A stretch of 64,000 nucleotides of DNA from positions 744,001 through 808,000 of the forward strand of contig NC_045722.1 in NCBI RefSeq assembly GCF_009834535.1. Direction: 5' to 3'. Positions within the stretch are counted from its first letter, which is position 1; every line of letters starts with the position of its first letter. Below, piece after piece: positions 3,929 through 51,509 of the stretch. The stretch comes from Camelus ferus. Taxonomy: Eukaryota. The translations under genes were made by a program, and so were the position numbers. The notes under the pieces were generated by a model. That model was not told where the DNA came from. It saw only the letters and a program-made list of their open reading frames with translations, and made no database searches.

Positions 3929-4017
3929 GGGGAGGGTGTAGCTTAGTGGAAGAGTGTGTGCTTAGCGTGCACGAGGTCCTGGGTTCAATCCCCAGGGCCT
4001 CCATTTAAAAAAAAAAA
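3929..4017 (+). mobile_element. tRNA-Ala-derived SINE (vic-1 type, camelid)
   Basis: ggggagggtgtagcttagtggaagag...cttagcgtgcacgaggtcctgggttcaatccccagggcctcca with A and B boxes and an AGC anticodon-like loop, followed by an A tail. Confidence 0.85.
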
Positions 4018-4139
4018 CCGTGCTTTATTTCTTGGCTCTTTATCTCAACTTTAGCATAAGAAGTAAATTTAGGCCAGTAGATTCTGTCAGCACGTCATGC
4101 ATGGTAATAAACACCACTTCTGTCTGGTTTTTCCTCAAG

Positions 4140-5158
4140 GACTAACTGTGATGCCTGACGAAGAACAAAACTTGAATCATTACGTGCAAGTTTTACAGAA
4201 CCTAATACTAAGTGTTCCCACCAAGGGGCCAGGTCATCAGAGAAAATCAAAGACTCCAAGTAATGTTAATTCTGCAGCATCGAGAGTATCAAAGTTTAAG
4301 GAGGTGAAGTCGCACGATGAAGCCACAGCTGAGAACGATGTGTTGATCAGTCCTGTCACTGACGAAACTACAACTTTCCCTACCAGGGGCTTCACGTTGG
4401 AAGTAGAGAGGGAAAAACACACTAAAAGCACAGCGTTCTGGTCAATTAAGCCAAATAACATTTCTGTTGTTTTACATGCGAAAGAACCTTACATTGAAAA
4501 AGAAGAGCCGGAGCCGGAGCCGGAGCTGCCTGTAAGACAGACTGAGGCACCGAAGCCAGTGCCAAATGCCACCGAACTGCCCACAAGGGAGAACACCGTC
4601 GTGGACACCGCCACAGAGCTGGAGGACGTTCCTCAGCTCTCGGGAGACTACGAAGCGGAACAGTCTGAAGCACTGACGTTTGAAGAACACCCACAGGATT
4701 TGTATAATGAACGCATCCTGAAAAAAATTTCAGATATCAGTGCGCAGGTGCAGCGGGTGCCTCTTCCTGAGAGCCTCAAGCCAGAATACAGAGCGGACAT
4801 CGAAGCTGCCAAAGAGCACCTCAAACGGAGCCTTGCTCTGGCAGCCGCAGCAGAGCATAAAGTGGAGAAGATGTACAAATCTCAGATGTTACCGCTAGGG
4901 CGGAGCAGCGGGGGGGCCGACGACGTTGAAACTGTTATTAACGTGCTGTATAATTCTAGATCTAGGCTACCTGAATATTTCAATATTAGGTATGTTCCGC
5001 CAGGGATGAGAGCAAAAGCTACTATAGTATCCAACACATTGAGAAAAATACTTTGTGTAAGTCTAGGGGAAACGGAAAACCTTATTAGGAAGCTATTAAA
5101 CAATAACATAAAAATGTTAAACCTACTTAATACCCACGACAAAGCTGACTTAGGCTGA
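4140..5158 (+). CDS. SPESP1: Sperm equatorial segment protein 1, large coding exon 2 (signal-peptide exon lies upstream of the window)
   Basis: Translation has the SPESP1 hallmarks PDEEQNLNHYVQVLQNL, FWSIKPNNISVVLHA, EEPEPEPE and KEHLKRSLALAAAAEHK. Acceptor ttttcctcaag ends at 4139 (phase 1); stop TGA at 5156-5158; no disruptions. Confidence 0.97.
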
Positions 5159-25655: not shown

Positions 25656-27804
25656 AGAATTTGAAAATTGATAGAACTCTGACCTTGAGGTCTTCCCAAT
25701 TCTAAGAAAAGAAGTCAAGCCTAAATCGAAACCTTGAGGCTGAGCTCCCATGATGTTGTCATCACAGCACAAAGCCTGGGACGGTCCCCCTTGAAAGAAG
25801 AGCAGACGCCCTCCGTCCTGTCTGGTGCTCTGTCTGGACGCATTTGGATCCGGTGGTTGCCGCAGGGCCACGTCAGAACGGGAGCAGCGCTTACCGGTGC
25901 CACCGGAAGATCTCCCCGGTTCCGCAGAACTTACCTTCCCTGGGGACTGATCCGAATGAGAGCCTCTGAGCCTGTGGGCAGAGAACAGGTGGGTGACAGC
26001 AGAGGGATCTGGGGGAGTCCTGCCGGTTCAGGGGCCGACGTGACTCACACAAGGAGCCTTTAGGTACCCCACCAAAGCCACAGGCTTGGATAAACTTCTA
26101 CCAAACAGCTTAAAAACAGAACTAAACTAAACTAAGCGAAAGCTATTTCCCTCATTTTGGAAATGAACCAGAAACATCTGAAGCTACCAGGGGGAAGCCC
26201 CAGTCAGCAGCGGGCGGCCAGGGGCTCTGCCCGAGCCTGTCGCTTGCCAGACAGCACAGAAGTGAACAGCCCTCGAGACTTTGACTGCACAGTCTAAGTG
26301 ATCACATGATTTCTCTTAGATTTTTAACAAAGAGCTTGCAGACCTCCATTTTCCCACAGGTCTCCTGGGCAGAAAGCCCCTCCACATGGCTGTTCCAGCG
26401 TGTTTTTACAGGGGACGTTGGGGCTGGTGTGAGCGCCCCGCGTGGTCACCTGCACAGTCTCACATTCAGCCCCAGATGGGCCGAGTCCCTGCCTGAGCCA
26501 CCTGCACCTGCTGCTTCTGGCCTCTGGGCTTCGCTCTCCTCGTCTGCGGGAAGGTGACGCTCACACCACCAAGCGGGGCCACATTACGTGCTGAGCTGAG
26601 CAGTGTGTGTGGAGTCCTCCGCGGAGCGCTCGGCTTAGGCGGTGCTTTAACACGTATGTCGGGGACTGATGCTCTTGTGGTCGATGCGATCTCACCGAGC
26701 ATTTTTCACCGCGTGTTTCTGGGTCTCCCACCTGCCCAGTCTCCTTGAGGGAGGGAGAGTGGAAGGTCCTGGGCCAGATGGAAGACACCCAGCGTTCTTC
26801 CCAGGGGAAGCCTTGCCACGCCCATGCACCAAACCTCCTTGGCCCGAGCTCGCCGCCACACAGCACATGGATCACTGAGAGGCTGTGGATGCCAGCAGCT
26901 TTTTAGGAAAGTCAGGAAGAGGAGGAGCTGGGGAGAAGTGAACTGTGGGCTTCACGATGCAGGCTGCCAGTGCGGACAGCAGGCTTCGTGGAACCTGCGG
27001 TCTAGAGGACGGCAGAGGATGAGCGTGCCAGGAGACGCGGCCCCGCCACCTGAAGGCGGCAGAGGGCGAGTGGCTCGTTTGTCCAGCTTTCCATTCCGGT
27101 GACAGGGGACGGGCAGGGCTCCTTTCCCCTGGGGGCCCACAGAGGGCGCCCTGGCCGCCGGGGGCAGGAGTTGGGGGACCTGAGCTGCTCCTGCCTGGCT
27201 GCTGGCTGCTGCGTGATCTTTAGCAAGTCACCAGCTGTCTCTGGCGCCGTTTTCTCGTCTGGAGAAGGAGGACTTGGCCAAGCCAGACTAGTAGCCACAC
27301 TGAGCGTTTAGCATCTCATCGGGTCTTCACAGCAGCCCTCTGTGGGAGGCCGACTGTCACATTTACAGACGAGGGAACTGTTGTGCCCTGGGGTCGTCCG
27401 CTGGGGCAAAGCAGGCTGGACCTGAGGTCACGGTCCCGGGGGCAGTTCTGGCCTCTCGTGACGACCTCGTGTCCCACGAGCTCTGAACCCCGAAGAGTCC
27501 CCCCTCCTCGTCGAGGACTTCGGTTTCCTGCTGTGCCGCTTTCTTTGCCGCCATGCCCTCACCCTCCACTTCCCACCGGCTTTCCAGCCTTGTCTCCACC
27601 CCTTCCCCAGCGTTGCCTTTCTCCTTCTGTAGGCCAGCACGCTACGATTTCTGAGAAGAGGGAGGGGAGCAGCTGGCACCCCGTCCCCACCCCTCCGGGC
27701 TTACCAGGTGCATGCAGCCTGTTTCCCAGAGTTGGCTCTGCTTTGGGGAGTGCGTCCTGTGGGGTCCCCAGGGGTGGAGGAAGGGGGGCACTTTAACCCC
27801 AGGG

Positions 27805-30510: not shown

Positions 30511-30634
30511 CGCCGCGAGTGCCAAGGAGGACGCCAAGTGGCTGCAGTGGGTGACGCGCCAGTTTGAGATGATTGCAGGTGAAGACGGGGAGACTGGTCT
30601 GCAAGAGTCCAAAAGAGCCCTGAATGCGGAAGAG
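30511..30634 (+). pseudogene. NOX5: NOX5 pseudo-exon 2 (EF-hand 1); ATG mutated to GCG
   Basis: AASAKEDAKWLQWVTRQFEMIAGEDGETGLQESKRALNAEE versus recalled human TMSAEEDARWLRWVTQQFKTIAGEDGEISLQEFKAALHVKE. Acceptor ctcccag at 30510; donor reads GCAAGA. Confidence 0.96.
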
Positions 30635-32149
30635 GCAAGAGCCCACTTGGGGATGGGGCCCTGGGTCCGCGTTTCGCGGAGGACGAGCAGCCTGGTTTGC
30701 AGGGCGAGGTGCCGCGCAGGAGGGAAACGTTGCTCCCGGCCCCCGGGGCCCCACTTCTGAGCAGGGCCAGAGGATGTTTCTGTCTCTGCCGCGGGGCTCT
30801 TCCGCCCCTCTCGGTAGCCGTGGCTTCCTGGGCCTTCAGACGTATGAAGCTGGAAATCGTGCCCTGTCAAGTCTTAAGATGCTATTGACCTCGCAGTCAC
30901 CGCCCTGCTCGGCGACGGAGGTGACGCTGACCCGCACCTCCTGCCACTGAGTAAGGTTCCCACGGCTTGTGTCCACTAGAGGCCGTTTGCACTGCCCCAC
31001 CCTCCCCAGTCCTTCTCGGTGCCAGACCCTCTGCCCATTCCCAGCACAGCCTGCGTGCCCGACAAACAGCAAGGACGTGAGCAGGGAGGCAGGAGGGATG
31101 AGCCTCAGATGCCAGCCTCTCCGCATGCGTCCCTGGGCTGGCGTCTGGTGGTGGCCTGCGTCCTTTAGAAGCACCAGCCGGCGAGCATTTGAATGCCCCT
31201 GTTGGATGGGAGGGACCCTCACTTGCTGGCACCAGGGATGTTGCTTGGAACTCTAAATGTCCTGCCTCCTTTCATGGTCAATACGGGGAAGGGAAAAAGA
31301 GACCTGCCCGACAGGGGCTGTACAGTATCTCAGATAACGGCCATCCGTGTCGGCAGAGGGTAGTAACGCATCACTCAAGGGACCCAGGGCGCAAGAGTGA
31401 GGCCAGGGCAGGGCTGACGCCCACAGGTGAATGTGGTGCTTGGGACTCTCACTTTGTCTGGGTCGGTCAGCACGGCCTCCAGGGGGGTGTCGGGCCTGAC
31501 GGATCTGCAGCAACGACCCGGCCTGTCCTAGACCCTGTGTTTCCAGCGCCAGCACCAGGCCTGGCAGGCAGGGTCTGCGCGAGACATGGTTGTTGGATGA
31601 ATGATGAATGGAGAGGATGAACTGGCAAATGAGAGCCAGTGCCGTTGGGAAACAGCCCACACTGAGGGCGCCTGGACACCAGGGCAGGGGAGGCCCAGGC
31701 CTCCGGCGGCCTGCGCTTGTCCCTCCTTCCTGTGCTCACTGCCCCACGGGGCCACCCTGGGAAGGACCAGGCAGGACCCGGGGTGGCCTTTGTCTAACCC
31801 TTTTCCCCTGTTGAGTACGGGGCCACCAGGGGTCTGGATGGCAAGGCCGACGGGGACGGAGAGCCTGTGCAGATTACCAGGCACCAGGGCCGGAGAGGGG
31901 CCCAAGGCCCGGACACAGCCATCCTCGCTGCCTCTCGCTAGAGCCCAGACTTGCCCTCAGCTGGCTGGAGGGCCGTGGACACGGCCCCCTGGAGTGGCTT
32001 CGTGGGTAGATCACACCTTGTGTTCAGGCACCTGGGTGCTCCCTGAATCCCACCACCCCACAGCATGCACACACACACACACGCAGTGAGTGAATCCAGA
32101 GCCCAGCCCTGTGGCCACACTTGCCTGTCTCCCCCTCTGCTCGGCACAG

Positions 32150-32291
32150 TCCTTCTTTGTTGAGAGATTCTTTGCCTTGTTTGACTTGGATGGAAGTGGC
32201 ACCATCTTGCTCCAGGAGCTGTGGCGGGCGCTCACCCACGGCAGCCCCGTGGGCAAACCCGGATTCCTCTTCCAGGTGTAGGACGTGGATG
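32150..32291 (+). pseudogene. NOX5: NOX5 pseudo-exon 3 (EF-hand 2); premature TAG at 32279-32281; 9-bp deletion
   Basis: SFFVERFFALFDLDGSGTILLQELWRALT---HGSPVGKPGFLFQV*DVD versus recalled human SFFAERFFALFDSDRSGTITLQELQEALTLLIHGSPMDKLKFLFQVYDID; AG and GT intact. Confidence 0.97.
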
Positions 32292-32366
32292 GTGAGGCCC
32301 TTTGTGGGGCTCGGGGGGCTCGGGGGGGGGCAAGGGACTTGGCCCGTCTCAGTGGCTGTCTGGCTC

Positions 32367-32430
32367 CCCTCCCTCCCTCTCTCTGTCTCTCTCTCTCTCC
32401 CTCTCTCTGTCTCTGTCTCTGTCTCTCTCT
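32367..32430. repeat. (CT)n/(CTCTGT)n simple repeat
   Basis: Read directly from the sequence. Confidence 0.9.
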
Positions 32431-32569
32431 AGGTTCCCCGCCCTATCTCTGTCTGGTTCCTGCCTCCCTTTTGTTGGTTAGAAGGTGGGACTCTGTCCAG
32501 GAGACAAATGGCCTTGATTCAACTCACCGGAAGCCAGGACTTTCCTTTGTTCTTTCCTATGTTTGAAAA

Positions 32570-33480
32570 AAGAAAGTGTTTTGTTGATTTTTGATAATAA
32601 AAATAGCCCACTGTGAACATTTTAGACGATACAGAATGGTTTAAAGAAGAAAGCAAAAATCACCCGTCATGTTTTTCTACACCGCCTTCTAACTGATCAC
32701 ACACACGTGTGCACCACACACTTTTTTTAGACAGAAAGGTGTCACACTGTGTGCACTGCCCTTTCCACTGAATATAAACACTTGTGCACGTAAGACTGTT
32801 ACTTTAGACCATCATTTTAATTGTAGTAAAATATATATAATATTAAATCTACCACTTTAACCGTTTTTATGCGCATTAAACACACTCACGCTGTTGTGCA
32901 GCCGCCAGCAGCGTCCACCTCCGGAACTTTCCTGTGTCTGCAAGCTGACACTGACACCCCTCCCTCCTCCACCCCCACCGTTCTGCTTGCTGTTGCTGAG
33001 AATCTGACGGCTCGAGGTACCTTCTGGAAGTGGAAGTATTCATGGTTGTCCTTGTGCAACTGACTGACTTCCCGCAGCACAGTGGCCTCAAGGCTCCCCC
33101 GTGCTGCACCGTGTGGCAGGATTTCACCCGTTTTTGAGACTGAGTAAGACTCCGTTGTGTGTGATACTGCACTTGCTTACCCACCCGTCTGTCGGTGGAC
33201 ACGAGGGCTGCCTCCCCCTCTCGCTACTGTGAGTCATGCTGCTGTGAACATGGTGCACAGATATCTCTTCAAAAAGACCATGCTTTCTGTCCCTTTGGGC
33301 ACGTCCCCCAGAGTGGAGTTCCTGGCTCCTCTGTCCGCAGGGCCTGTCACCTTCCACAGCGGCCGCACCGTCTTACGTTCGCACCAGCAATGCACAGAGC
33401 TTCCGGTTTCTCCAACCCTGGTTACTTTCTGGTTTGTTGCTTTTTTTTATGATAACAGCCATCCCAGTGGGCGTGAGGCG
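32570..33480 (-). mobile_element. Old L1M 3' fragments
   Basis: Antisense L1 motifs (tgtgagtcatgctgctgtgaacatgg; gttcgcaccagcaatgcacagagcttccggtttctccaacc), heavily GC-shifted. Confidence 0.7.
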
Positions 33481-33959
33481 GTGACTCAGGGTGGTTGCAG
33501 CGGCACCGTGGCGGCTGCTTCGTGTCCCTGCTCCGGTGTGCTCCGGTGCCCCACGCAGCGCAGGCTGGCCGCCACCGTCTCTGACTGAGGCCGGGTTACC
33601 GCGGTTCACACCTCGGCCCCACGGGTTATTAGTCACGTGGCGCTGGGCAAGCTCCTTAACTTCTCTGTGCCTCATTTCTCCACACATCACATAAAAAGCA
33701 CGGTCATCGTAGTAGTAGCTTCTCACGAGGCTGGTGGAGGGGCCGTCGCTGACCTCTGTGCACTCAGAACCGCGCCCGGTGTGGCTGCCCCTTTCCAGGT
33801 GTCAGCTGCGGCTCGTCACCATTCGCTCAGACCCCGTTTCCAAAACAGACAGTTCCGTTGTTCCCCGCTCTTTTTTTTTTTTTTTTTTTTGGCATTATAA
33901 GTGACACTGCCGTGACCATCCTGGTGTTCACACCTTTGGCAACTTTGTGGCTTAGAGGG

Positions 33960-34530
33960 TCTCTGAAGGCCTGAAGCCATCAAAGGAAGGGAAGCTGAGG
34001 TGGGGAGGAGGCGCCCAGCAAGACTGGGGTGGTTGGTGAGGCCAGACCGTGTGGGCCCCAGAGGCCGTGTCTGGAGCTTCAGGGCAGTGAGCAGCGGGGA
34101 GCCACTGAAGAGCACTGAGCAGGGGAGTCACGGGGCTGGATTTGCACCTGAGAAGCGCAGCCTGGCTGCAGTTGTGCCCCCTCTGGCCCTGGGTTCCTCT
34201 GGCTCTCATCCCCACCTGACGCGGGCTCGCCAGGCCTCACGGGCCTCGCCGAGGCTGGGACCGGCCTCGTCCTGCTCTCCTGGGTGCTCTACGTCCGCGG
34301 TGAGCACTTAGCGGGTGCAGGAGATGGGAAGACAGGTCGTTGGACGCACCTGGGGATGAGGGACGTTTAGGGTCAGCGGAATAGAAGGACAGAGGAGTAA
34401 GGAATAAGAATGCGTGCACAAGAATGATTGTGAAGGGGACACTGGGTCTGAAACTGGCTCAGGAGAGAATAAGGCTGGATGGATGAGAGGGTGTGAAGGG
34501 GACCGGGGAGGGGCTGGGGCTCTGGATGTG
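33960..34530 (-). mobile_element. L2 relic
   Basis: ggggagccactgaagagcactgagcagggg; gatttgcacctgagaagcgcagcctggctgcag; ctgaaactggctcaggagaga. Confidence 0.55.
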
Positions 34531-35625
34531 GCAGAAACCTGTTGCCCGGTGGCTCTCGACCAGGAGAGCTGAAGACAGGAGGCGTGGCCGGGGAGCGCGG
34601 CGTTAGCTCCGCATCGTGCTGTGGTGACAGACTTTGGCTTTGCCCCAGGTGGCGGCCACAGTACCAAGGAGACTTTCTGTCCCTGTGCAACCACCTTCTT
34701 CCAGATGCTGCTTTACGTGCTATATAATCAATCACCTGTTATCCTTGAACCAATTCTGCAGAAGGGGGGTGATCAGCCCCATCCTAGAGATGAGCAAAGT
34801 AAGGTGCAGTCTCTACGGGGCTCGGAGCCGCCGCCACATGGTGGGGGCAGAGGTGTGTTGCTGCGACAGGTGTGTCTACACCCAGACGCCCTGAGATCAC
34901 TGACACGAGTCCTCCTGCTCAGGCTGGTTCCAGGCCCCTGGATCCCCCAGTTCGCGGATGCTCAGGTCTCTCATGTAAAATGACAGCCTGGAGTCGGCTT
35001 TCGGTGTCCGTGGGTCCACGTCTGCGAGTCAGTCAGACGCGGCCAGAACCTGCAGTGGGGAGTCCGCCCACACGGGGGTCCGCGGTCGTGTGGTCACGTC
35101 ACTCTTAGCCACTCACCCACACGTAAGGCCACCAGGCTGGAACTGAGGGCCCAGCGGTGGCCTCTCAGGGCCGCGTGGGTGAGTAGAGTCTGCTACCAGC
35201 CAGGGAGCAGCAGGGAGCCCCTCCTCACTCTGCCTCACACACAGTTCGCCTCTGGGTAGTCGGGGCTCCGGGCATGCAGCTCCTTGTGGACTCTGAGCGG
35301 ATGGTCTTGGAGGTCGAGTGGTACTTAGAGAGGAGGCTGGAGATGCCGGAGGAAGCCTTGCACTGAAACCAAAGGTTCTCCATGCTTGAGGAGGTGTTTG
35401 CCTCTGTTGAGCAAACACTAGGGAGCCATGGAAGGTTTGTGAGCAGAAGGTGCCACATGCTCTTCCATTGCCTGGACTATACTCCTGAAGACGGTTGGCA
35501 GAAAGCTGGAGATGACCGGACAGGAAGGGGTCACTGCTCGATGCAGTGGTTGTGCAAAGCAGGGGGATCTGCAAGGACAGAGTGGGGTCGGGGGCCCCCC
35601 CTCGGCTTCCTCTCACTTGGAGCAG

Positions 35626-35835
35626 GCAGCCGCTCCATCGACGCGGACGAGCTGCGCACCGTGCTGTAGTCGTGCCTGCAGGAGAGCGCCGTCTCGATGC
35701 CCGCAGAGAGGCTGGACCAGCTGACACTGGTGCTCCTCCAGTCGGCCCACCGGGACTGCAGCGGCGCCATCACCTTCGGGGAGCTGCGAGCCGAGCTGCA
35801 GGGCTCCCCGGGGTCATGGAGAGCCTGACCGTCGG
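35626..35835 (+). pseudogene. NOX5: NOX5 pseudo-exon 4 (EF-hands 3-4); TAG at 35667-35669; 1-bp deletion at ~35805
   Basis: GSRSIDADELRTVL*SCLQESAVSMPAERLDQLTLVLLQSAHRDCSGAITFGELRAELQG, then a frameshift before GVMESLTV. The exon is 210 nt, versus 211 expected from the recalled human peptide. Confidence 0.97.
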
Positions 35836-36689
35836 GTACCTCCCGTCTGTGCAGGGCACTGCGGGTTGGCCATTACACTCCAGCTGCAGAGTGGCCCGCT
35901 CCCGCCGGTCGGCTCCTCCTCGCCCACCTTCTCTTGGGGACAAAGGTTCCACCTTCTGCATGTCTCTTTAGAATCGGCTCACAATATTAAGCACCTACTA
36001 TGTGCCGGGCATTTTTACAAATACACCAGTGCGAGGAAATTACAGTTACAGAAGGGCGTTCAAGTTACTCCACCTGAAGCAACGAGCCTAGGCTCACACA
36101 AGGCGTTGGCCAAGGCAGTTTATTTGCTCAGCCGGTCAGCCAGCCACTCGCGGGCCGAGCCCTGCTCTCAGGGATGGCGGAGGCTGCTGGGCTGCATTCC
36201 AGGTGGAGAGACGTAATCTATACCAACAAGCAGACACATAAACTAGGTAAGCACAAACCTGATAAGAACTGCAGAGAAAATAATATAGAAAGGGTGTAAC
36301 AGACCCAGACCCGACTGACCCCAGGCTCTGAGTGGCGCCACCTCAGTAGTTCATTCTTGCGTATTGACTTTCTTGTGCGTTACCATGTGTCTCAGGCCCT
36401 TCCATCCTTTTCAGTTGCCTCCCTTTTTTTCTAGTTGGGAAGTAAAGAGAGGTAATAAAAATGGCTGTGGAAGTGGCATCAGACAGACCAGAGATTCATC
36501 CTAGGCCCACTTTGCTGTGTGACTATAAGCAAGTCACTTGACCTCTCTGTTTCCTGGTATAAAAGGAAGCCATCTTGCTTGCCACAAGGCTCCAGAGGGT
36601 TAGTGGGCTACAGAGGGAGTGGGGTCTCCAGGTTCAGACTCCTGTGGTCCCTCCCACCACATCCCTCTGAGTGGAGCCCTCTCCCCCAG

Positions 36690-36924
36690 TGCTGCCCACT
36701 GGCTGACGCCTCCCACTGCCAGGCCACGCCAGCGCCGTCCTCGCCCGCTGACCTCCGCCTACTGGCACAACCACCGCAGCCACCTGCTCTGCCTGGTCGT
36801 CCACGCGGGCCTCCCCTTGCTGCTCTTGGCACTGGCAGCTAGTGCGCACCGGGCCCTCGGTGCCAGTGTCATGGTGGCCAAGGGCTGCGGCCAGTGCTTC
36901 AACTTTGACTGCAGCTTCATTGCG
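36690..36924 (+). pseudogene. NOX5: NOX5 pseudo-exon 5 (polybasic region, TM1, start of TM2); reading frame intact
   Basis: AAHWLTPPTARPRQRRPRPLTSAYWHNHRSHLLCL...GASVMVAKGCGQCFNFDCSFIA; 235 nt; AG and GT intact. Confidence 0.97.
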
Positions 36925-38176
36925 GTAGGGCTCCATGGGCGCCTGGGGACGCGGGTGGCGGGGCTAATGTGGCTCCTCTTAGACAAAATGACCCACCTGT
37001 GGACACCTGCAGCGCCAGAGTAGGATGGCACCTTAGAAATCAGCTGGGCCAGTACTCAGTGGTGGAGATTAAGACTCAGAGAGGGTCAGTGAGTTGTTCG
37101 TAGTCACGCAGCAGGTAAGGAACATAGTTGACACTTCTGTGTGCTTACCGTGTACCAGCCAGGGTGCTGAGCACTTTCCATTCAATCCTCACAGTAACCT
37201 AGGTGGGCCCAGAGGAGGCGGGGTGGGCTCCCGTTCAGGGTGCCAGCTGGAGAGAGAACACTTCGAGGGGCCTTGACTGCCAGACTAAGGAGCCAGACTG
37301 TGGTCCTGGGGACCGGAGACCGAGGGCTCCAAGTGTATTTGATGGAAAGTACAGCAAAACAACTACACGACAACACAAGTGGAACTATCACAACTAAAAC
37401 AAAACACAAACAAACAGAGAACACCCTCCCCGCCAGTTACCCAGCACGTGCTTATTTATCGCCGTGCGCCCTGCTGTCCTTCACCAGGGCTTTGCGGCAC
37501 GAGACAGCCGGGAGGCAAGGGTCACCCTCACGGTCAGGGGTGTTCGTCTCTAGTTCAGATACTCTCCTTGACAGTATCGGCCTCTCATCTGAGTGGGCCC
37601 CATTTTAGCCGCAGGACTGGCTGCAGAGAACCCACGCCGGCAGCGGGAGCCGCGTGACTCATTGCGTTATTAGCAGCCCTTTCAACCTGCACTGTCTCTG
37701 AAGGGAGCTTTTTCAGCTACTTGTCCTTCCTGGGGGTGGTTAGTTCAGTTCGTGAAAACCGGATACTGTGATCTGCACGTCCCCGTACCGCGGCTTGCAG
37801 AAATGCATTCAAGCAAACGAGCAAGTGGGCAGCCCTCACCGTCACCGCCCGGGACGTCTCAGGAACCACAGGCGACTCTGCCCGTCTGACGGACGACTAC
37901 GCGAGGGCCCACGTCAACACAGACACTGACCACCAGGAAGGGCTTACGTGCTTCTCACATGTTCAGACAAAAGTAATAGGAGCAGACGTCCTGTAACACG
38001 CGCTCTCCCCTCCCCAGACCCGGAGGCCCCACTCTGCAGACCGCAGCGGTGGCCCTGCGGGAGCAGCGCGGGCTAGGGGCCGGGAGGTGGTGGCGGCCCG
38101 TCCGGGGGCACGGCCGGCTCCGGGCAAGGGCGGGGCACAGAGCAGGCAGGCTGGCTCTCTCCCGCTTTGCCGCCAG

Positions 38177-38315
38177 GTGCTCGTGCTCAGGCGCTGCCCC
38201 ATGTGGCTGGCTCAGGCCCTGCCCCTGGACCACAACGTCCAGTTCCACCGGCTTACGGGCTGCGTGGTGGTCGGGCTCTGTCCTGTGCACACTGTGGCCC
38301 ACGTTGTGAATTTCG
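38177..38315 (+). pseudogene. NOX5: NOX5 pseudo-exon 6 (TM2-TM3); 15-bp in-frame deletion
   Basis: VLVLRRCPMWLAQALPLDHNVQFHRLTGCVVVGLCPVHTVAHVVNF; it lacks five residues of recalled human LTWLRATWL; both TM3 heme histidines are present. Confidence 0.96.
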
Positions 38316-38494
38316 GTGAGTAGCCTCGGGCTGGAGTGTGGGTGCGGTGGGACGTGGGCTTCCCACAAGCCACCTGGTTATCCTGCCCCTGTGTGTCCGC
38401 CTGCCCGCTGGGCGTGTTGGACTTTGGACGGGGAGGGGTGGGAGCCCCAACGGGCAGGAGGAGTGAGAGCAGCTTGTCTCGTGCTTGTCTGCAG

Positions 38495-38665
38495 CACTCC
38501 GGGCTCAGTCCGGGGCCAGCGCCTTCCAGTTTTGGGAACTGCTGCGCACCACGAGGTCCGGCGTTGGCTGGGTCCGCGGCTCGGCCTCCCCAGTGGCGAG
38601 GTGCTGCTGCTGCTGCTCGGTTTGCCTGCTCCAGCTCCCGTGGCCGTCGCAGCAGCCACTTAGAG
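38495..38665 (+). pseudogene. NOX5: NOX5 pseudo-exon 7 (TM4); frameshifted; last recognisable exon
   Basis: LRAQSGASAFQFWELLRTTRSGVGWVRGSASP, then VLLLLL and FACSSSRGRRSSHLE in two other frames. The exon is 171 nt versus 179 expected. Confidence 0.95.
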
Positions 38666-39099
38666 GTGCCCCAGCCCTTGCCCCTGCCTCTCCCAGGCTG
38701 GGCTCCCACTTTCTCGTCATGCTGTGTCCCCTCTGTGTCCCCTCCAGGGCCCGGGAGGGTCCCGGGCTGGCCTGCACGTGGTGGACACATGACTGGGTTC
38801 TGCCCTTGGGCGGTGGTGTGTCTGGAGGATTCTGCCTTTAGCTGCCTTGTCCCCTCGCCCTGTTGGGTTAGGCTGGGCTCAGGACTCGCAGGGAGAGGGA
38901 GGAACACGGGCTCTCCCGGGTTCTGGTCCCTACCCCGCTGCTTATGGGCACTCATTTCCCTCATCTGTAAAACGCAACTACAGTTCTTCCGAAGGGCGTG
39001 GGAGCCTATGGAGGAACCTAGTAAAATCCACAAAGGACCCCATGTGGGACTTGCAACCACGTGTGTCTGAAGTCTTTCGCTCCAGACAGACTTCAGGCA

Positions 39100-39114
39100 C
39101 CACTGGGGGGCGCT
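39100..39114 (+). promoter_or_regulatory. CTCF-like motif
   Basis: CCACTGGGGGGCGCT has one mismatch to the CCASYAGRKGGCRCT core. Confidence 0.45.
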
Positions 39115-41119
39115 GCGGAATCAGCGATCTCGAGAGCTTTTGTTTTGCCGGGAAGGAGACTGGTTCCTGAGTGCCAGTGAATCGAGGAAGGGCCGGTGAA
39201 GACCCGGCCCCACCCTGAAGCCCCCGCTCAGGCAGTGCCTCCAGGCCCAGACTCGGCAGAACTGTGAGGTCAGGAGACCTCGTTTCAAGATGAGAGTTTC
39301 TCTAGCTGCCAGCCCCTCACCCCAGCACACAAATGCACACACCACCCCGACCTGCCCAATCCCTGCCCCTGCACACATGCACGCGCACACACGTGTGCAC
39401 ATGCACACGAACACACGCACGCACACGTGCTCATGAACAAACACAGACACGCGTGCACGCAAGCACGCACACGCACCCCTCCCTCCCTGTACCCGGAGCT
39501 GGGTTCTGGGCTTCCCTCTGCTCTGCAAGGTCAGGAAGGGCCAGGCTTGGAGGAGACTTCTGTGTTTCAGGCCCTGCGCCTCACATCGCCATAGGTGGCA
39601 GGATGGGATTTGCTGGTGCACAGACGACCCGGGCCGTCCATCTGGGCGTTTCCTGGATGTCCAGGAACAAATGCACCCCGAAGGCCGGCTGTTCTCCCTT
39701 CACCCACGTGTCGGCAAGGTGTGGACACAGCTGGGCCTGCGATGGCCAAGGCCGACCCACACCCGGAGAAGAGAGACTGCGGATCGGGGGTGGGTTATGG
39801 GGTGTGTGCTGCCCTTCCCCCTCACGCTGTGAGCTCCCGAGGTCAGGCCTGTGGCCCCGCAACCTCCCACAGAGGGAAGGAAAGGGGGCCTAACCCGGAC
39901 ACCAGTTCCCACCAGGGGGAGGGGTCGCTTGAATGGACTCATCCATGCAGGCGGGTTGGGCCAGCCTTGCAAGTGGGCGGAGCAGGCGGCCGCCTTCCAG
40001 GTGCAAGTTCAGGGGCCTGGGAAGTTCCCTCCCAACTTCTTTTCTTCCGCGTGCAGAGGTGAGGACTGGCGTGGGCGTCCCGACGGCGATGGCGATGGCG
40101 GGGCCCTGCGCCTCCAGCCCCCGTGTAGCAGGAGGGGGTGGGGCTCAGGGTCCCCGGTCCCTCTGCAACACATCCTGCCCCTCTTCCCATCCTGCTTTTC
40201 TGCCTCTAACTCAAAAGAGATGAATGACTTTGAAAGAGCAAATGAATCAGAAATAGGGAAAGCAAAAAAGAGTAATTTTGCCAAGTTATTATTCAAAGGC
40301 GCTGTCCGGGACCGGGCGCGAGAGCAGCCCCATCCGTCACCCGGCAGAGCCCTGGGGGCCGCGGGGGCGGCCGTGCTGCCTGTGCTCTGGGCGTGCTGGG
40401 CGCTGGGGCCCTCTGCCAGCTGCCACAGATGGAGGGAGGGCGGGCGGCCAGAGGGACACTGAAGGGCCCAAGACAAGGCTTACTGGCCTGCTTTTCCTGA
40501 TGGGCCGGGGCTGGAGGCTGCGCTCTGGGCTGGGCCAGCTCTGGGGGGGGGGGGGTGCGCCCCTGGAGCAGCGCGAAGCCTGGGGCTGGAGCCTGCTCTG
40601 CCCTGCTGCCCCCACCCCGACCCTTCGCTGCCCTGAGGGAGGCAGCCACCACCCCATCCTGCCGCAGGGGCCCACCACACCTGCCCCTGCGTGCCACTTA
40701 GCCCACCGCACACCCTTGGGGAGGGGATGAGCGGCTGGATGGTAACAAAATCATTGTGGCACATGTTCGCTTCTCCTTGTATTTTTAAATTACTTTATCA
40801 TAATTTTTATGCATAGGTTATCCCTGCTTATTACATTGTAATTATATTCCACTTGGGGGCGGCAAGGAAATCGGATTCCTTTCTGTGCGCAAGTTCCACA
40901 TAGAGGAAGCCCTTGGAAAGCAAGTGCGGAAGGAAAGGGAGCAGGAGGGAGGGGCTGAGCCTCCGGCAGAGCCTCAGTGCGTCTCCGAGGTCCCACCAGC
41001 CCTCGTCTGGGAGCTGTGGCCCCAGGCTCCGCATCAGAGTGCGTTTTGGTGCCTTAACTAGATGAGTTTGTTGGATTCCTGCCACCGGGGTGCTGGAGTT
41101 GACCAGTGGGAGGAAGAGT

Positions 41120-41275
41120 CAAGGCCCCTGCTCTCAGTTTCCTCGTCTGTAAAAGGGGGTCAGTGACAATGGTACCCATTAGGGGCAGTGATGACAACAT
41201 GGTTAAATGAACCGGTGTGCACGAGGCGCTCGAAACACTGCTTGGCAGGGAGTACGTCTCAGTGACGCTTTTATT
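41120..41275 (+). mobile_element. MIR relic
   Basis: ctcagtttcctcgtctgtaaaagggg core followed by a MIR-like 3' part. Confidence 0.75.
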
Positions 41276-41289
41276 CACGCCTTGGTCCG

Positions 41290-41470
41290 TTGGACTGCTG
41301 TAGCACCGCAGATGGGGGGCTTATAAACAGCGGAAATTGCTCCCTCAGTCCTGGGGGCTGCAGTCAGCAGGTGCCAGCGCGGTCAGGCTCTGGCGAGAGC
41401 CCTCTTCGCGTTGCCCCACTGCCGTCAGGGCGCGTCTGCCGCCTTTATGACCGGTCACATCTGGGGGCCT
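41290..41470 (-). mobile_element. MLT1 LTR fragment
   Basis: gggggcttataaacagcggaaattgctccctcagtcctgggggctg is an antisense MLT1 end. Confidence 0.65.
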
Positions 41471-42680
41471 AATTGATGCCCTCCCCTCCCGGGGAGGACA
41501 CCAGGCTCCCAGGGGTCTGCAGACACCGCCGTGTCCCCGGGGAGGCGCTGGCCGGCTGTGTGGGCGGCGGTGCGGCAGACAGCAGCCCTCCCTGCTCCTC
41601 TCCCAGAGCGCTGGTCCCAGGCTGCGGGAGGCGGAGAGGATCCAGTCAGGCCGCCGGCTCATTAGCGCTGCATTGTGAATTCCGGGGATAATGTAGGCTC
41701 TCCTCTCCCCTGATTGCTTCCGAAATCTCCTGCCTGTTTATCACATCTGAGTGCTTCTCCACCCTCTGCTCTTGGCTCTGTCTGCTCCTCTTCTCCAGGA
41801 GAGGAGAGCAGAAATGCTCCTGAGGGTTTCCAAGCAGCCTTGCAGACAAGAAGGCGATGAGGCTGTCTGCACATCGCAGGGGAGCAGGCGATGGGGTGGG
41901 TTTTGGGGGCAGGAGAGCCCCAGAAAGCACCGATCCCCCAGGAAGGAAAGCCCCCTCCTCTCCGAGCAAACTCTGTCAAGTCAGCTGAGGCTGCTTATCA
42001 GAGAGTCACTCAGTCACTCACGTCACAAGCACAGTGGCAGGTGACAAGGACACAAGTGTGGCGCCCATGCAATGAAGCAGATGCCAGCGCAGGGCCTCAT
42101 GAGCTGCTGCGGTGGCCAGAGAGGGCAGCCACGGTCAGGGTGGGGTGAGAGTCCCTGACCTTGATCCTGCAGGAGGCATGAGACACGGGTGGGGGTGTAT
42201 TTGTGTGCACAAGCCCTGGCACATGCAGAAGCACAGAGGAGTGGCTGGAGGGCAGGTCGGGAGACTCGCGGGGGAGAGAGTGCAGCCGTGGAGGTGGTCG
42301 GGTGGAACGGGCAACCCCAGCCCCAAGTCAGGGGTGAGGCTGCGCTTCCTGAGGGCCTCTGGGCCCTGCCCCACAGCTGGCAGGCCCTCTCCCCGGGCGG
42401 CCATCTCAGCGTCTCCCACTGCAGAGTCTGAGTGCTCAGCTCACCTCCTTGCTGCTCTGGTGGGTTGGCTGCCTCTGGCCCAGGGTCCGTGTCCAGTCTC
42501 ATCAGCCATGGGGAGGGGGGTCTGGACGTCACAGGACTGCACGGTCTGGAGCTGTGACCTGATCCCCACAAGGGCTGTGGGCGGGGCCGGCAGTGAGCAT
42601 GCCTCCCACTGGGACCACCTTGTGCTTCTGTTCACACCGTGCACCGGTTCCCACTGTCACTCCCTCGTGGCCCCAGGTGG

Positions 42681-42683
<3 letters not shown>

Positions 42684-42728
<45 letters not shown>
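42684..42728. repeat. (TG)~22 microsatellite
   Basis: Read directly from the sequence. Confidence 0.95.
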
Positions 42729-42730
<2 letters not shown>

Positions 42731-44819
42731 GTGTCCTCTCCGCCCACAGCTGGGTCCTCTCTCCCCTCACAGCTCCTCCAGTGCTTAGCGAACAGCAGCA
42801 GAGACTTTTTCTCTGGTCAGGTTGTATCCAACGTCATTTGAATTGTTTTACTGTTTAGTTCTGATTTGCAGTAGAATGTCTGTCCCTTTGTCAGGGCCTC
42901 ACCCCGTGAATAGCGAAGGGCAAGACAATCTGACCCCAACATCCTTTCCCCTTTCTTCTTTGCAAACTGACCCCCGACCTTGTTCTGGGCATACAGAATG
43001 ACCAGGTTAATTAGTCCTGAAACACTGACGTGGGCACGTGCCTGTTCTCAGCAATGGTGAGACTCTGGGAAAGTTTGAGTCTTCTTAATAAAAGGAACAG
43101 GAGAGGCTGCTGCCACCCCCGCCCCCTGCTTCCTGTCTTGGCCAAGATGCCAGGACGTCTGGAGGGACCCTGCAGCGACCAGGAGGCAGAAGCCAAAGCA
43201 CAGGCCGAATGGGGGTCGGAGGCAGAGAGCCGGGCCCTCGCCGGCGGCCCCCGCTCTGGGACAGGAAGTGTGCCTTCCTCCCAGGGCAACGCTGTGGACT
43301 GAGGTGTGCTCCTCGCGCTGAACGGACTCCTCACCGATTCACTCGGTGTCTGTGCGATCTGTGTATGCTAAGATTACACGTGGGGCAGGCTGGGAGGACC
43401 CACAAACTCGGGGACCACCCTGAAGTTTGAAAAGAGGAGCTGTGAAGATCCCACTGGTCCCCGGCCCTCGGCTTTCCTCTGCCACCGCCCCCCGCGCCCC
43501 CTCCAACTTGCCCTTGCTCCCTCCGTGTCCCCCAGGGAACGGGCAGAGTCGCTCATTTTCCTGTGAGTCAAGAAGAGTGACTCAGCGCCAGCCATCACCT
43601 TCTGGCCTGGCCCCGACCCCCAGAGCCAAGGAGGCAAGCAGGACCCAGACCTCCCCAGGCAGGGGACGCTGGGGCCCCACCAAACACCCGACGGGAGGGA
43701 AGCCAAGAGGGGGCGGCTCTGGAGTCATCGTCTGTCCCGTGGCACCAGCCTCGTGTTGTGCCTGACGTGAGCCACGAGCCTGCTAACCACCCACCAGTCA
43801 GCCTCGGTGCGGCCGCTGCTCCGACAGTCTTAGCCTTGCTCCTGCTCTGCACCCGGGGCCTGACAACCCCACCCCGCCCCGCCCCGCAAGCTGTCCCGGG
43901 GGGGCTCTTAAAGGGCTCCCAGCAAACAGGTTCTGCACAGCCCCGCGCCCCCTCCCGTGGGTGCTGAAGAGAGACTCTCCCCCGAGACGCCACAACCTCC
44001 AGCGTCTGCCGCCCAGCAGTGAAGGGCACATGCCCATTCCACACCCGGGAGGGGAGAGTGAAGACCATGAAACAACCCGCTTTCCTGAGCCCCCCTGTGG
44101 ACTACAGCCTGACCTTTGCAGGCCTCTGCTCAGCCCCGCTGTTTTCACATCCAGCTAAACTCAGGCCCGTGCGTTCCTCGGCTCCTCCTGCCGCAGCGCC
44201 TGGTTCTCCAGCTCCGCTGCTAGCGATGCCCCTGCTCCTCATTCTCTGCCACACCAGCTGATGCACTTCTGTGTTTTTGAACCGTCTGTTCCTGGAAAGC
44301 AGAGGAAAGTAGCAGATTGATGTACTGGCTGTGTGGCCAAGTGACTTATTTTTAATGTGACTGAACAGGACGCACACCTGCCTGTGGAAACGCACCCACC
44401 CGGAATCGTCAGGGACTCAGGTGGCCGTGTGGGCAAGGGGAGGACAGGCCTCCCAGGAGGGAAGGGGGGGAGCAGAGGAGAGGAGGTGGGCCGCTCCCTC
44501 GAGTCACGGTGGCAGCAGCACCGGGAAGCGCCAGCCGGGCCAGGTGCCCCCCGGCTTGGCTGATGCCTGAAATGTCGTCATCAGACTTCCATCCCTCTGC
44601 TTCAGTCAAACACAGTGTGTCCCCCGCTGAAGTGCACACGTGACAGGTCAGCGCATAAAGCCACACCCGCCTTTTCTCCGCGAGAAGGGCCTTCTATGAA
44701 AGCAGGGCTGGGCTGGGCGTTAACACAAAGTGTGCGGGGATCACCAGGGAGGGAACAAGATGGCACAGCGAGAAAACCGGGGTCCTGGAGACTCTCTCCC
44801 CTCCATGACTCTCCTCAGT

Positions 44820-45200
44820 CGCAGCAGCCCCGAGTCTTCGCCGTGTCCAGGCGCCCGCGTGGTACTTCCCGCCGTGGTGGCAGCAGCCGCCGCGCTCCCC
44901 CGCCCCGCTGTCTGCGGCCAGCCCCCGGGTCCCCGCACCGCCCGCGGGCCGCTCGGGGCTTGCGCGCGTCTGTGTGTCAGCAGAGCAATGTGGCAGGACG
45001 GGCCGTGGCGGCTGGTGGACTGGCCCCAGAGCCCACACGCGTCTCTGTTTGCCGCCGCCTTCTCCCGGGTCATCGCGCTCCCCTCCTGGCTTGTGCCCAG
45101 AGCAGGTTAGAAACGCCTGAGCCACCGCCTTCCAGCGCTGACGCTCCCTCCCGAGGCCCTGGCTCAGCCCCGTGGGCGCCTGCGCCACCCACTGTCTCTT
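44820..45200. other. CpG-island-like patch
   Basis: Dense CpG; the line 44881-44940 is 51/60 G+C. Confidence 0.7.
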
Positions 45201-46513: not shown

Positions 46514-46867
46514 CGCTGTGGACTGAATTTGCTCCCACAAAGTCGTATGCTGCAGACCCAATGTGGTCATGGTTGGCACAAGGAAATAATGAAGGTTAAG
46601 CGAGGTTGCAGGGCGAGGCCCAGGTCCGATAGGGTCAGCCTACTTTTGAGAAGAGACTTCAGTGAGCTCTCTCTTGCAGGCACCGAGGAAGCTTGCATCA
46701 AGGCCGCCATCTGCAAGCCGGGGAGAGAGCACTCAACTCAGCAGACCCCGCACTGGCTGGACCTTGATCTCGGACTTCCAGCTCCTACAGCCGTGGTAGA
46801 ATAAAGGCCTGCGGTTTAAGCCACCCGGTCTGTGGTATTTGGTTCCTGCAGCCCCGGCAGACGGTGC
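46514..46867 (+). mobile_element. MLT1A-like solo LTR
   Basis: Starts tgctgtggactgaatttg; ends ccttgatctcggacttccagctcc...aataaaggcctgcggtttaagccacccggtctgtggtatttgg. Confidence 0.8.
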
Positions 46868-49800: not shown

Positions 49801-51509
49801 GACTTGGGGGGTGGTGCTGACGGCGTTTACCGGCTGATCAGGTGTCTGAGTGGGGCAGGGGGGGCGTGGCTCAGGGGGAGGTGGGCTACATCAGGGCGGC
49901 TGCCCAGGAAGCTGCTTGTGACCTAAAACGGGCCGCACTTCCTGCCGAGTTCCAACCCCCTGCCGCTTAGGCTGGGCCCTCTGGGAAGGGCACCGAGAGT
50001 CCTAATGGGACAGCGGGCTCCTGCCACTTCCCTGGGAGGTTCCCCGCAGATTGCTGGGTGAAACTGCTGCAACCTCGGAGAAGACCTGCGGCAATCGGAA
50101 GCGGAGCCTTAACCAAGCCTCCCTACGGTGAGGCCTGAAAATAGGGTTTGCAAGATCAAAACAAAACAAAACAAAAAACTGGGTGTAAAATGCTCTGTAA
50201 AATTGATATCTCAGTGTTTCCTGCCACGCCCGACTAAGGAGCATGGATCCCCGACTTCCGAGGGTGGGGTGGTGGCTGACGGGGGGTCATGCAGCCCACC
50301 CTGCCTCCAGGAAAATGTCAGGATGTGGTAAGTCCTGTTTTTCCTTCACGTGCAGTCAGGGCCGAGAACCCAGGGCCACGCAGCCGCACAGATGGTCAGA
50401 GCTCAGAGCTAGGAACCTGCCGGCCCCAGGCCTAAGCAGGCCCCCAGGAACGCAGCTGCCTGCCTGCCTGCGTCCGGGCCGGACGTCCTCCGACCGAGCC
50501 TTCAGTTCTTCTCCAGGGGACACGCCGCCCAGGTAGTGTGTCTTCTGTATCTGTTGGCTTTTTTTATTTTAACACTTTACCCTGGCCTCCTCCTGGGACG
50601 TGTTTCCTGACCCAGCTCACATCCCTACAGCAGCGCTGGCGTCCGCGCCTCGCGCACACCGCTGTGACAACTTGGAGCCGCGTCCCCAATCTAAAAAAGC
50701 TGTTCCCTGTCAGCGACTTCTCTGGAACGTCTCCAGCAGTTCCTCCGCTAGTTATCGGGGCTCACGAGGATTTGCTTTAGCAAGAATAATCCTGGAACGT
50801 TGACTTTTGCCCCTAAAACTCAGGCTGTGCTCTGCTCTACAGTGGAACGTGATACAAGCATTTAAAACGGGGCTTATATAAGACAGGGTGGTTGGGGTGG
50901 GGGGTGGTGTTTAAACTTTGGAAGAATGCTTACCACCGTGTGAAAAAAAGCAGGATGCAAAATTGTATGATTTCAAGTATGTTAAAAGTACGTGTGATGG
51001 AGTGAAGACAGACTTCTCGCCCTGCCCTCCCCGCCACCCCACACCCGCCCCGTTTCCCTTCCAGGTCACTAAAGCAACGTGCTTTCTTGTCAAGTTAATG
51101 ATGTCTCGTCATCCAGCCTTGACAGAGAGGAGGTCAGTGTTCTCTAGGGCTGATAAGGTCAGGGTGTTTGATCACCGGAAATAGCTACCAGTGTAGTAAC
51201 AGGAAGACTATTAATTTCTTATGTGGGTCAAATATTATTTGTATGGCTGTGGGTTTTTTCCGGGAAGAAATTAGTCTTGGGGCAGCGAGGCAGGTTTTAT
51301 TTCAGATGCACCGTTGGGTGAGGCAGCTACAGTCTAAGTGGAAGACCCCGCATTCCCGACCCCCCACACTTGCACCGCCTTCTCCTCCTCTGGAGCCGGA
51401 GCCACTGGGGGCAGTGAGAAGAGACACGGTCACTCAGAGCCAGAGGCTGGGGTTGCGGGAGGCACAGGAGTAGGTTCAAGAATTCCTCCTTGCGACACAA
51501 ACGAACTCA

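What the first reader, a model, noticed from the sequence alone, without database searches (positions are those of the whole stretch)
30511..38665. NOX5 is a multiply disabled unitary pseudogene in what appears to be a camelid genome
Seen: six NOX5 exons in normal order beside SPESP1, so this is the orthologous locus and not a retrocopy. They carry ATG>GCG (30515-30517), TAG (32279-32281), TAG (35667-35669), a 1-bp deletion (~35805), an 8-nt net shortfall in exon 7, and in-frame 9- and 15-bp deletions. Established: NOX5 is the Ca2+-activated superoxide-producing NADPH oxidase, implicated in sperm ROS and in vascular and renal signalling, and it is absent from mouse and rat. Inference: this is an independent loss in the camelid lineage, old enough to accumulate many hits. 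Any link to arid or salt physiology or to camelid sperm biology is speculation.
Basis: partly seen in the sequence, partly recalled or inferred. Interest (0 to 1): 0.85.

Follow-up and report, generated by a model that had tools for sequence, protein, structure and literature searches.

The report
Camel NOX5 is a dead gene
In Old World camels the gene for the calcium-activated superoxide-producing enzyme NOX5 is a wreck: its front half carries stop codons and frameshifts and its whole catalytic back half is deleted. Camels are therefore natural NOX5 knockouts like mice and rats, which is a clear but ordinary kind of gene loss.

Summary
The window is a Bactrian-type camel: 99.8% identical to Camelus ferus and 99.0% to C. 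dromedarius. NOX5 lies downstream of an intact SPESP1, so this is the orthologous locus.

Seven NOX5 exons are present, not six, because a long-isoform ATG exon sits at 27019-27065. Compared with hippo, cattle, rhinoceros and cat, the camel copy has:
- two in-frame TAG stops;
- three frameshifting deletions (1, 1 and 7 bp);
- three in-frame deletions (3, 9 and 15 bp);
- loss of the internal ATG;
- a GT>GC donor change.

The decisive lesion is a clean deletion of about 19-25 kb with its junction at 38984/38985. It removes all nine downstream coding exons: the rest of the membrane domain, the FAD and NADPH domains, and the stop codon.

All lesions recur in independent assemblies. C. ferus covers exons E0-E4. 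Dromedary covers everything, including the junction. Only the exon-3 TAG is missing from dromedary, so it is private to the Bactrian/ferus line.

dN/dS on the camel branch is 1.16 (CI 0.71-2.08) against 0.21 on the other branches. This indicates neutral decay over most of the branch, so the loss is probably pan-camelid. Llama and alpaca could not be tested.

I found no paper describing this loss. It is a new member of a known kind, of moderate interest.

The parts
4097..5158 (+). SPESP1 main coding exon, an intact 353-aa ORF. It is the synteny anchor upstream of NOX5.
   Evidence: Pfam PF15754 SPESP1, E=2.6e-139; ORF list.
27019..27065 (+). NOX5 exon E0, the long-isoform start exon (MSVPGDAAPPPEGGRG). 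The ATG is intact. There is a camel-specific 3-bp in-frame deletion (27048^27049), and the donor at 27066-27067 is GC where all four outgroups have GT.
   Evidence: tblastn with rhinoceros N-terminus, translation; alignment. Identical in C. ferus and dromedary.
30511..30634 (+). NOX5 exon E1. The short-isoform ATG is replaced by GCG at 30515-30517. The GC donor at 30635-30636 is natural and conserved in all five species.
   Evidence: identical in C. ferus and dromedary.
32150..32291 (+). NOX5 exon E2 (EF-hand). It has a 9-bp in-frame deletion (32229^32230) and an in-frame TAG at 32279-32281 (ancestral TAT/TAC).
   Evidence: Pfam EF-hand hits just below the curated cut-offs. Identical in C. ferus. 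Dromedary keeps the TAG letters but has a further 2-bp and 1-bp deletion beside them.
35626..35835 (+). NOX5 exon E3 (EF-hands 3-4). It has an in-frame TAG at 35667-35669 (ancestral CAG) and a 1-bp frameshifting deletion at 35804^35805.
   Evidence: Both are present in C. ferus. Dromedary has CAG instead of the TAG but shares the 1-bp deletion.
36690..36924 (+). NOX5 exon E4 (linker plus first transmembrane helices). The reading frame is open and there is no lesion.
   Evidence: E=2.3e-36 to human NOX5 residues 162-239.
38177..38315 (+). NOX5 exon E5 (ferric-reductase transmembrane region). It has a 15-bp in-frame deletion (about 38198^38199) that removes five residues (LTWLR-type segment).
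   Evidence: Pfam PF01794 hit below the curated cut-off; shared with dromedary.
38495..38665 (+). NOX5 exon E6, the last surviving exon. It has a 1-bp deletion (38593^38594) and a 7-bp deletion (38617^38618), both frameshifting.
   Evidence: identical in dromedary.
38980..38990 (+). Deletion junction at 38984^38985. The left side is intron sequence about 0.3 kb past E6. The right side is sequence that lies about 2.4 kb past the NOX5 stop codon in the outgroups. About 19-25 kb, including nine coding exons, is missing.
   Evidence: Collinearity breaks are camel 38980=hippo 29182 and camel 38985=hippo 52701; the right-hand block also starts at camel 38985=cattle 45052. Junction alignment. Same jump in rhinoceros and cat. 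Junction is contiguous and N-free in dromedary CamDro3.
38985..42974 (+). Former downstream flank of NOX5. It aligns to sequence beyond the 3' end of hippo, cattle, rhinoceros and cat NOX5.

Best explanation
This is the orthologous NOX5 locus of an Old World camel (Bactrian/wild-camel lineage), and it is a unitary pseudogene with no enzymatic function.

Only the seven 5' coding exons survive. They encode the EF-hand regulatory domain and the first part of the haem-binding membrane domain. They carry two nonsense codons, three frameshifts, three in-frame deletions and a lost internal start.

A single clean deletion of about 19-25 kb removed the nine 3' exons. Those exons encode the remaining membrane helices and the FAD- and NADPH-binding dehydrogenase domain, and the deletion also took the stop codon and the 3' end. 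The longest product from the surviving upstream ATG is about 100 residues. No electron-transfer module is left, so no superoxide can be made from this locus.

Shown: the lesions, their derived state, their presence in two or three Camelus species, and neutral evolution of the remnants.

Inferred: the inactivation happened early on the camelid stem, at least about 35 My ago, and is therefore shared by llamas and alpacas. The loss was tolerated because NOX5 is dispensable in this lineage, as it is in mice and rats.
For: - Identity: NOX5 by PDB match and tblastn.
- Synteny: SPESP1 lies upstream, and the locus is collinear with hippo and cattle NOX5.
- Lesions derived: all are changes relative to four intact outgroup genes.
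- 3' exons absent: none are found in the remaining 25 kb of the window or in 36 kb more of C. ferus sequence.
- Deletion junction: mapped to the base against hippo and cattle by alignment, with the same collinearity jump in rhinoceros and cat.
- Independent assemblies: lesions in E0-E4 are identical in C. ferus CB1 apart from one silent difference in exon 3, so the two records are independent. All lesions except the E3 TAG, and the junction itself, are present in dromedary CamDro3 at 99.0% identity.
- Neutral evolution: camel-branch Nd/Sd is 57.5/16.5, omega 1.16 (bootstrap CI 0.71-2.08), against 0.21 (0.15-0.29) on the other branches; Fisher p=2e-8.
- No full-length camelid protein: none is among the 120 best NOX5 homologues, a list that reaches down to fish. 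The only camelid entries are two fragment models built from these same exons.
Against: - No whole-genome search for a second NOX5 copy in camels was possible with these tools.
- No expression data were available.
- No llama or alpaca sequence could be reached, so 'camelid-wide' is untested.
- In C. ferus, exons E5 and E6 and the junction fall in an assembly gap. The deletion therefore rests on two assemblies (the window and dromedary).
- ATG>GCG and the GT>GC donor are not clearly disabling on their own. An upstream ATG exists, and GC donors occur naturally in this gene.
Confidence: 0.93

Rival explanations
1. The stops, indels and missing 3' half are sequencing or assembly errors in this assembly, and the real gene is intact.
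For: The region is GC-rich (about 0.6). The C. ferus assembly has a gap over exons E5-E6 and the junction.
Against: The same lesions occur base for base in C. ferus CB1 (E0-E4). They also occur in the dromedary CamDro3 chromosome assembly (E0-E6 and the junction). Those assemblies differ from the window by 0.2% and 1.0%, so they are independent. Nonsynonymous changes are also at neutral levels, which assembly errors would not produce.
Confidence: 0.01
2. This locus is dead, but a functional NOX5 copy (duplicate or retrocopy) exists elsewhere in the camel genome, so camels are not NOX5-null.
For: Whole-genome absence was not tested. NOX5 duplication has been reported in humpback whale (PMC6657726).
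Against: No camelid full-length NOX5 protein is among the 120 top hits, although three or more annotated camelid genomes are public and hits as distant as fish are listed. A search seeded with the camel fragment found only locus-derived fragments. The exhaustive representative search found a single camel-like hit.
Confidence: 0.03
3. The remnant still does something. It might yield a short EF-hand peptide from the upstream ATG, or a regulatory or read-through transcript with SPESP1.
For: The E0 ATG is intact and exon 4 is still open. In human, SPESP1 lies inside the NOX5 transcription unit (own knowledge).
Against: Omega is 1.16 over all seven exons with no sign of constraint. Bactrian-dromedary differences in the exons are about 0.8%, close to the flanking 1.0%. 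The ORF from E0 ends after about 100 codons. EF-hand ligand positions are changed, with D>H and E>G in the fourth loop.
Confidence: 0.04
4. The loss is recent and confined to the genus Camelus. Llamas and alpacas keep a working NOX5.
For: Only Camelus sequences were compared. One stop (the E3 TAG) is demonstrably young, being private to the Bactrian/ferus line.
Against: At least 63% of the roughly 60-65 My camel branch must have been neutral to give the observed omega. That predates the Camelini-Lamini split of about 16-25 My (own knowledge). Eight of the nine small lesions and the large deletion already predate the Camelus crown.
Confidence: 0.2

Closest known systems
Loss of Nox5 in mouse and rat (muroid rodents)
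   Same: A lineage-specific absence of the same gene in otherwise normal mammals. It shows NOX5 is dispensable (abstract of PMC4950256).
   Different: It is an independent event in Artiodactyla. Squirrels, gundi, rabbit, pig, ruminants and hippo keep the gene. In camels a recognisable half-gene remains at the locus, with a mapped deletion junction.
Functional mammalian NOX5 (human structures 6sz5 and 8u7y-8u87; hippo, cattle, rhinoceros and cat genes)
   Same: Same locus, same exon order and phases for exons 1-7, and the same conserved GC-AG intron after E1. Identity is 65-80% per exon.
   Different: Camels lack nine exons, covering the remaining membrane helices and the FAD_binding_8 and NAD_binding_6 domains. 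The surviving exons carry stops and frameshifts.
Classical unitary pseudogenes (for example GULO in primates)
   Same: A single-copy orthologue decaying in place. It combines exon deletion with point lesions and has a neutral dN/dS.
   Different: The gene and lineage differ. No phenotype is yet linked to the loss.

Membership tests
NOX5 orthologue (EF-hand NADPH oxidase) | Position downstream of SPESP1 and collinear with NOX5 of other mammals | tested here: met
   SPESP1 at 4097-5158. Collinear blastn blocks with hippo, cattle, rhinoceros and cat.
NOX5 orthologue (EF-hand NADPH oxidase) | N-terminal EF-hand domain | tested here: met
   Exons E1-E3 align to NOX5 residues about 2-160. Pfam EF-hand hits for E2 fall just below the curated cut-offs. 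The domain is recognisable but broken.
NOX5 orthologue (EF-hand NADPH oxidase) | Complete six-helix ferric-reductase membrane domain | tested here: not met
   Only the exons up to residue about 367 remain. E6 is frameshifted and the next exons are deleted.
NOX5 orthologue (EF-hand NADPH oxidase) | FAD-binding and NADPH-binding dehydrogenase domain | tested here: not met
   No tblastn hit in 25 kb of the window plus 36 kb of C. ferus downstream sequence. The region is deleted relative to four outgroups.
Unitary pseudogene | Disabling lesions that are derived and reproducible in independent assemblies | tested here: met
Unitary pseudogene | Neutral evolution of the remnant (omega about 1) | tested here: met
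   Omega is 1.16 (0.71-2.08) against 0.21 on functional branches. The method was parsimony ancestors plus Nei-Gojobori counting, not a full likelihood model.
Unitary pseudogene | No functional copy elsewhere in the genome | tested here: inconclusive
   No camelid full-length NOX5 is in the protein databases. The genomes themselves could not be searched.
Unitary pseudogene | No functional transcript or protein | not testable with these tools
   No expression data were available.

The most novel reading that the evidence does not exclude
NOX5 was lost at the base of Camelidae more than 35 My ago, convergently with muroid rodents and possibly sirenians. Under this reading the loss was favoured rather than merely tolerated, for example by lowering Ca2+-triggered vascular or renal superoxide under chronic dehydration and salt load, or by changing sperm redox physiology. 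All camelids would then be natural large-animal NOX5 knockouts.
Probability: 0.1. Interest if true: 0.65.

Novelty: new member of a known kind. Interest (0 to 1): 0.4.

Why it matters
NOX5 biology is hard to study because mice and rats lack the gene. It is implicated in human sperm function, hypertension, diabetic kidney disease and vascular disease. A second, independent and well-documented natural loss in large, long-lived domestic mammals gives a comparative handle. Camel sperm, vessels and kidneys must work without NOX5, so whatever replaces it, or the absence of NOX5-driven pathology, can be examined.

There is also a practical point. The two database proteins derived from this locus are gene-model artefacts and should be annotated as pseudogene fragments. 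They are 'NADPH oxidase 5, partial' in C. dromedarius and a C. ferus hypothetical protein. As a class of finding, a lineage-specific unitary pseudogene is ordinary.

Tried and rejected
- Searched for 3' exons by tblastn with five mammalian NOX5 proteins, over the window and 36 kb of further C. ferus sequence. Only chance-level hits (E>0.3) appeared.
- Searched the protein collection with the 248-aa open frame spanning exon E6 and the junction, hoping for read-level contigs from other camelids. No hits.
- Scanned metagenome contigs for the junction sequence, looking for host contamination. No hits.
- Six literature searches on NOX5 with camel, camelid, pseudogene and gene-loss terms. No paper on a camelid NOX5 loss turned up.
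- Rejected 'the exons decayed beyond recognition' as the reason for the missing 3' half. The flanks align cleanly to both sides of a single gap in four outgroups.
- Rejected ATG>GCG as a key lesion, because the long-isoform ATG exon upstream is intact.
- Llama and alpaca sequence could not be obtained by any available tool.
Full report
**What is there.** Window 30.5-38.7 kb holds six exon-sized blocks on the + strand that translate to the N-terminal half of NOX5.
- Exon 4 (36691-36924) matches human NOX5 structures (6sz5, 8u7y-8u87) over residues 162-239 at E=2.3e-36.
- tblastn with green monkey, squirrel, manatee, hippo, cattle, pig and rhinoceros NOX5 gives E=1e-9 to 1e-21 per exon, in the normal order.
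- A seventh exon lies upstream at 27019-27065. It encodes the long-isoform start MSVPGDAAPPPEGGRG.
- An intact SPESP1 coding exon lies at 4097-5158 (Pfam PF15754, E=2.6e-139).

This is therefore the orthologous locus and not a retrocopy.

**Whose genome.** An exhaustive protein search with exon 4 returned a 273-aa 'hypothetical protein CB1_000359007 [Camelus ferus]' that contains exons 3 and 4 of the window verbatim. Its scaffold (L001, KB016649.1) is 99.8% identical to the window. A second fragment model, 'NADPH oxidase 5, partial [Camelus dromedarius]' (P0167), led to the dromedary CamDro3 locus (L006). That locus is 99.0% identical to the window and contiguous with it from 20.5 to 52.6 kb. 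The window is thus a Bactrian-type camel, C. bactrianus or C. ferus. Both comparison assemblies are independent of it.

**Lesions, polarised.** I fetched the intact NOX5 genes of hippopotamus (L002), cattle (L003), white rhinoceros (L004) and fishing cat (L005). Each has 16 coding exons and all Pfam domains. I aligned every camel exon to them.

Corrected exon limits are E0 27019-27065, E1 30511-30634, E2 32150-32291, E3 35626-35835, E4 36690-36924, E5 38177-38315 and E6 38495-38665.

Camel-specific changes:
- E0: a 3-bp deletion, and donor GT>GC at 27066-27067.
- E1: ATG>GCG at 30515-30517.
- E2: a 9-bp deletion, and TAT>TAG at 32279-32281.
- E3: CAG>TAG at 35667-35669, and a 1-bp deletion at 35804^35805.
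- E5: a 15-bp deletion.
- E6: a 1-bp deletion and a 7-bp deletion.

E4 is open. The GC donor after E1 is present in all five species, so it is a natural GC-AG intron and not a lesion. The E0 ATG is intact, so ATG>GCG removes only the short-isoform start. The GT>GC donor is at most weakening. From the E0 ATG the frame runs about 100 codons to the E2 TAG.

**The missing half.** No NOX5 exon is detectable after 38665 in the remaining 25 kb of the window. None is detectable in 36 kb of further C. ferus sequence either. In hippo and cattle the next exon lies only 1.1-1.2 kb downstream.

blastn shows the camel is collinear with hippo up to camel 38980 = hippo 29182. It resumes at camel 38985 = hippo 52701, which is 2.45 kb beyond the hippo stop codon at 50249. 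The right-hand block starts at the same camel base against cattle (camel 38985 = cattle 45052, stop at 42006). Against rhinoceros and cat the alignment resumes at 49158 (stop at 46616) and 46157 (stop at 43789).

A multiple alignment places the junction at 38984^38985 with a few bases of microhomology. The left side lies in a MIR-like element; that identification is from my own knowledge of the MIR consensus. One deletion of about 19-25 kb therefore removed nine exons. These encode the remaining membrane helices and the FAD- and NADPH-binding domains. The stop codon and the 3' end went with them.

The junction mapping here explains it.

**Not an artefact; shared versus private.**
- C. ferus carries E0-E4 with identical lesions. 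One silent difference in E3 shows the records are independent. Its E5, E6 and junction fall in a 4-kb N gap.
- Dromedary is N-free across E0-E6 and the junction. It shares the 3-, 9-, 15-, 1-, 1- and 7-bp deletions, GCG, the GC donor and the large deletion.
- Dromedary has CAG where the window and C. ferus have the E3 TAG. That stop is therefore private to the Bactrian/ferus line.
- Dromedary also has its own extra 2-bp and 1-bp deletions next to the E2 TAG letters.
- Exonic divergence between the two camel lineages is about 0.8% (9 substitutions in about 1,070 bp, 5 of them amino-acid-changing or nonsense). This is close to the 1.0% of the surrounding DNA.

**Selection.** I used parsimony ancestors on the tree ((camel,(hippo,cattle)),(rhinoceros,cat)) and Nei-Gojobori counting in the ancestral frame.
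- The camel branch has 57.5 nonsynonymous and 16.5 synonymous changes, omega 1.12-1.16, bootstrap 95% CI 0.71-2.08.
- The other branches pooled give 0.21 (0.15-0.29). Fisher's exact p is 2e-8.
- The camel ratio does not differ from the neutral expectation (binomial p=0.69).
- Solving the usual mixed-branch equation, at least 63% of the camel branch was neutral.

With a roughly 60-65 My branch and a Camelini-Lamini split at about 16-25 My (own knowledge), the inactivation probably predates that split. This is inference. No llama or alpaca sequence could be reached.

**Other copies and the literature.** Among the 120 best homologues of a full-length NOX5, many artiodactyls appear: hippo, pig, cattle, yak, goat, sheep, deer and musk deer. 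The list reaches down to fish, but no camelid appears. The only camelid entries are the two fragment models from this locus. A whole-genome search was not possible.

Literature searches found the well-known absence in mouse and rat (PMC4950256). They found nothing on camelids.

**Verdict.** Old World camel NOX5 is a unitary pseudogene whose catalytic half is physically gone. It has been decaying neutrally for most of camelid history. It is a new example of a known kind of event. Links to desert physiology or sperm biology remain speculation.

Noticed in passing
window 3932-4003 (+): Rfam tRNA match (38.9 bits) about 100 bp upstream of the SPESP1 coding ORF. It is most likely a tRNA-derived SINE rather than a tRNA gene.
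   Followed up: no
window 30635-30636 and orthologous sites in L002-L005: The intron after NOX5 exon E1 uses a GC donor (GAG|GCAAGT) in camel, hippo, cattle, rhinoceros and cat. This is a conserved natural GC-AG intron.
   Followed up: partly
P0006 (Trichechus inunguis), P0159 (Dugong dugon); hit list: The manatee and dugong NOX5 models are flagged LOW QUALITY PROTEIN, and the manatee model shows many small gaps. No cetacean NOX5 appears among the 120 best hits, although hippo does. NOX5 may also be decaying in sirenians, and its state in whales deserves a look.
   Followed up: no
P0001 (C. ferus EPY85633.1) and P0167 (C. dromedarius 'NADPH oxidase 5, partial'): Both database proteins are gene-model artefacts. 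They are stitched from pseudogene exons plus intronic or intergenic open frames, and they splice around the stop codons.
   Followed up: yes
L001 12375-16458 versus window 38071-45011: The C. ferus scaffold has a 4,084-N gap where the window has 6.9 kb. This hides exons E5-E6 and the deletion junction in that assembly.
   Followed up: yes
window 32327-32364 versus L001 6204-6666: Just after exon E2, at a GC- and CT-rich low-complexity stretch, the C. ferus scaffold has about 425 bp more than the window. This is either length polymorphism or an assembly difference in the repeat.
   Followed up: no
L006 30791-32054 (about window 51.3 kb onward): The dromedary annotation calls a 2,060-aa product that starts about 12 kb downstream of the deletion junction. 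No long conserved ORF was evident in the window there. Its nature was not examined.
   Followed up: no
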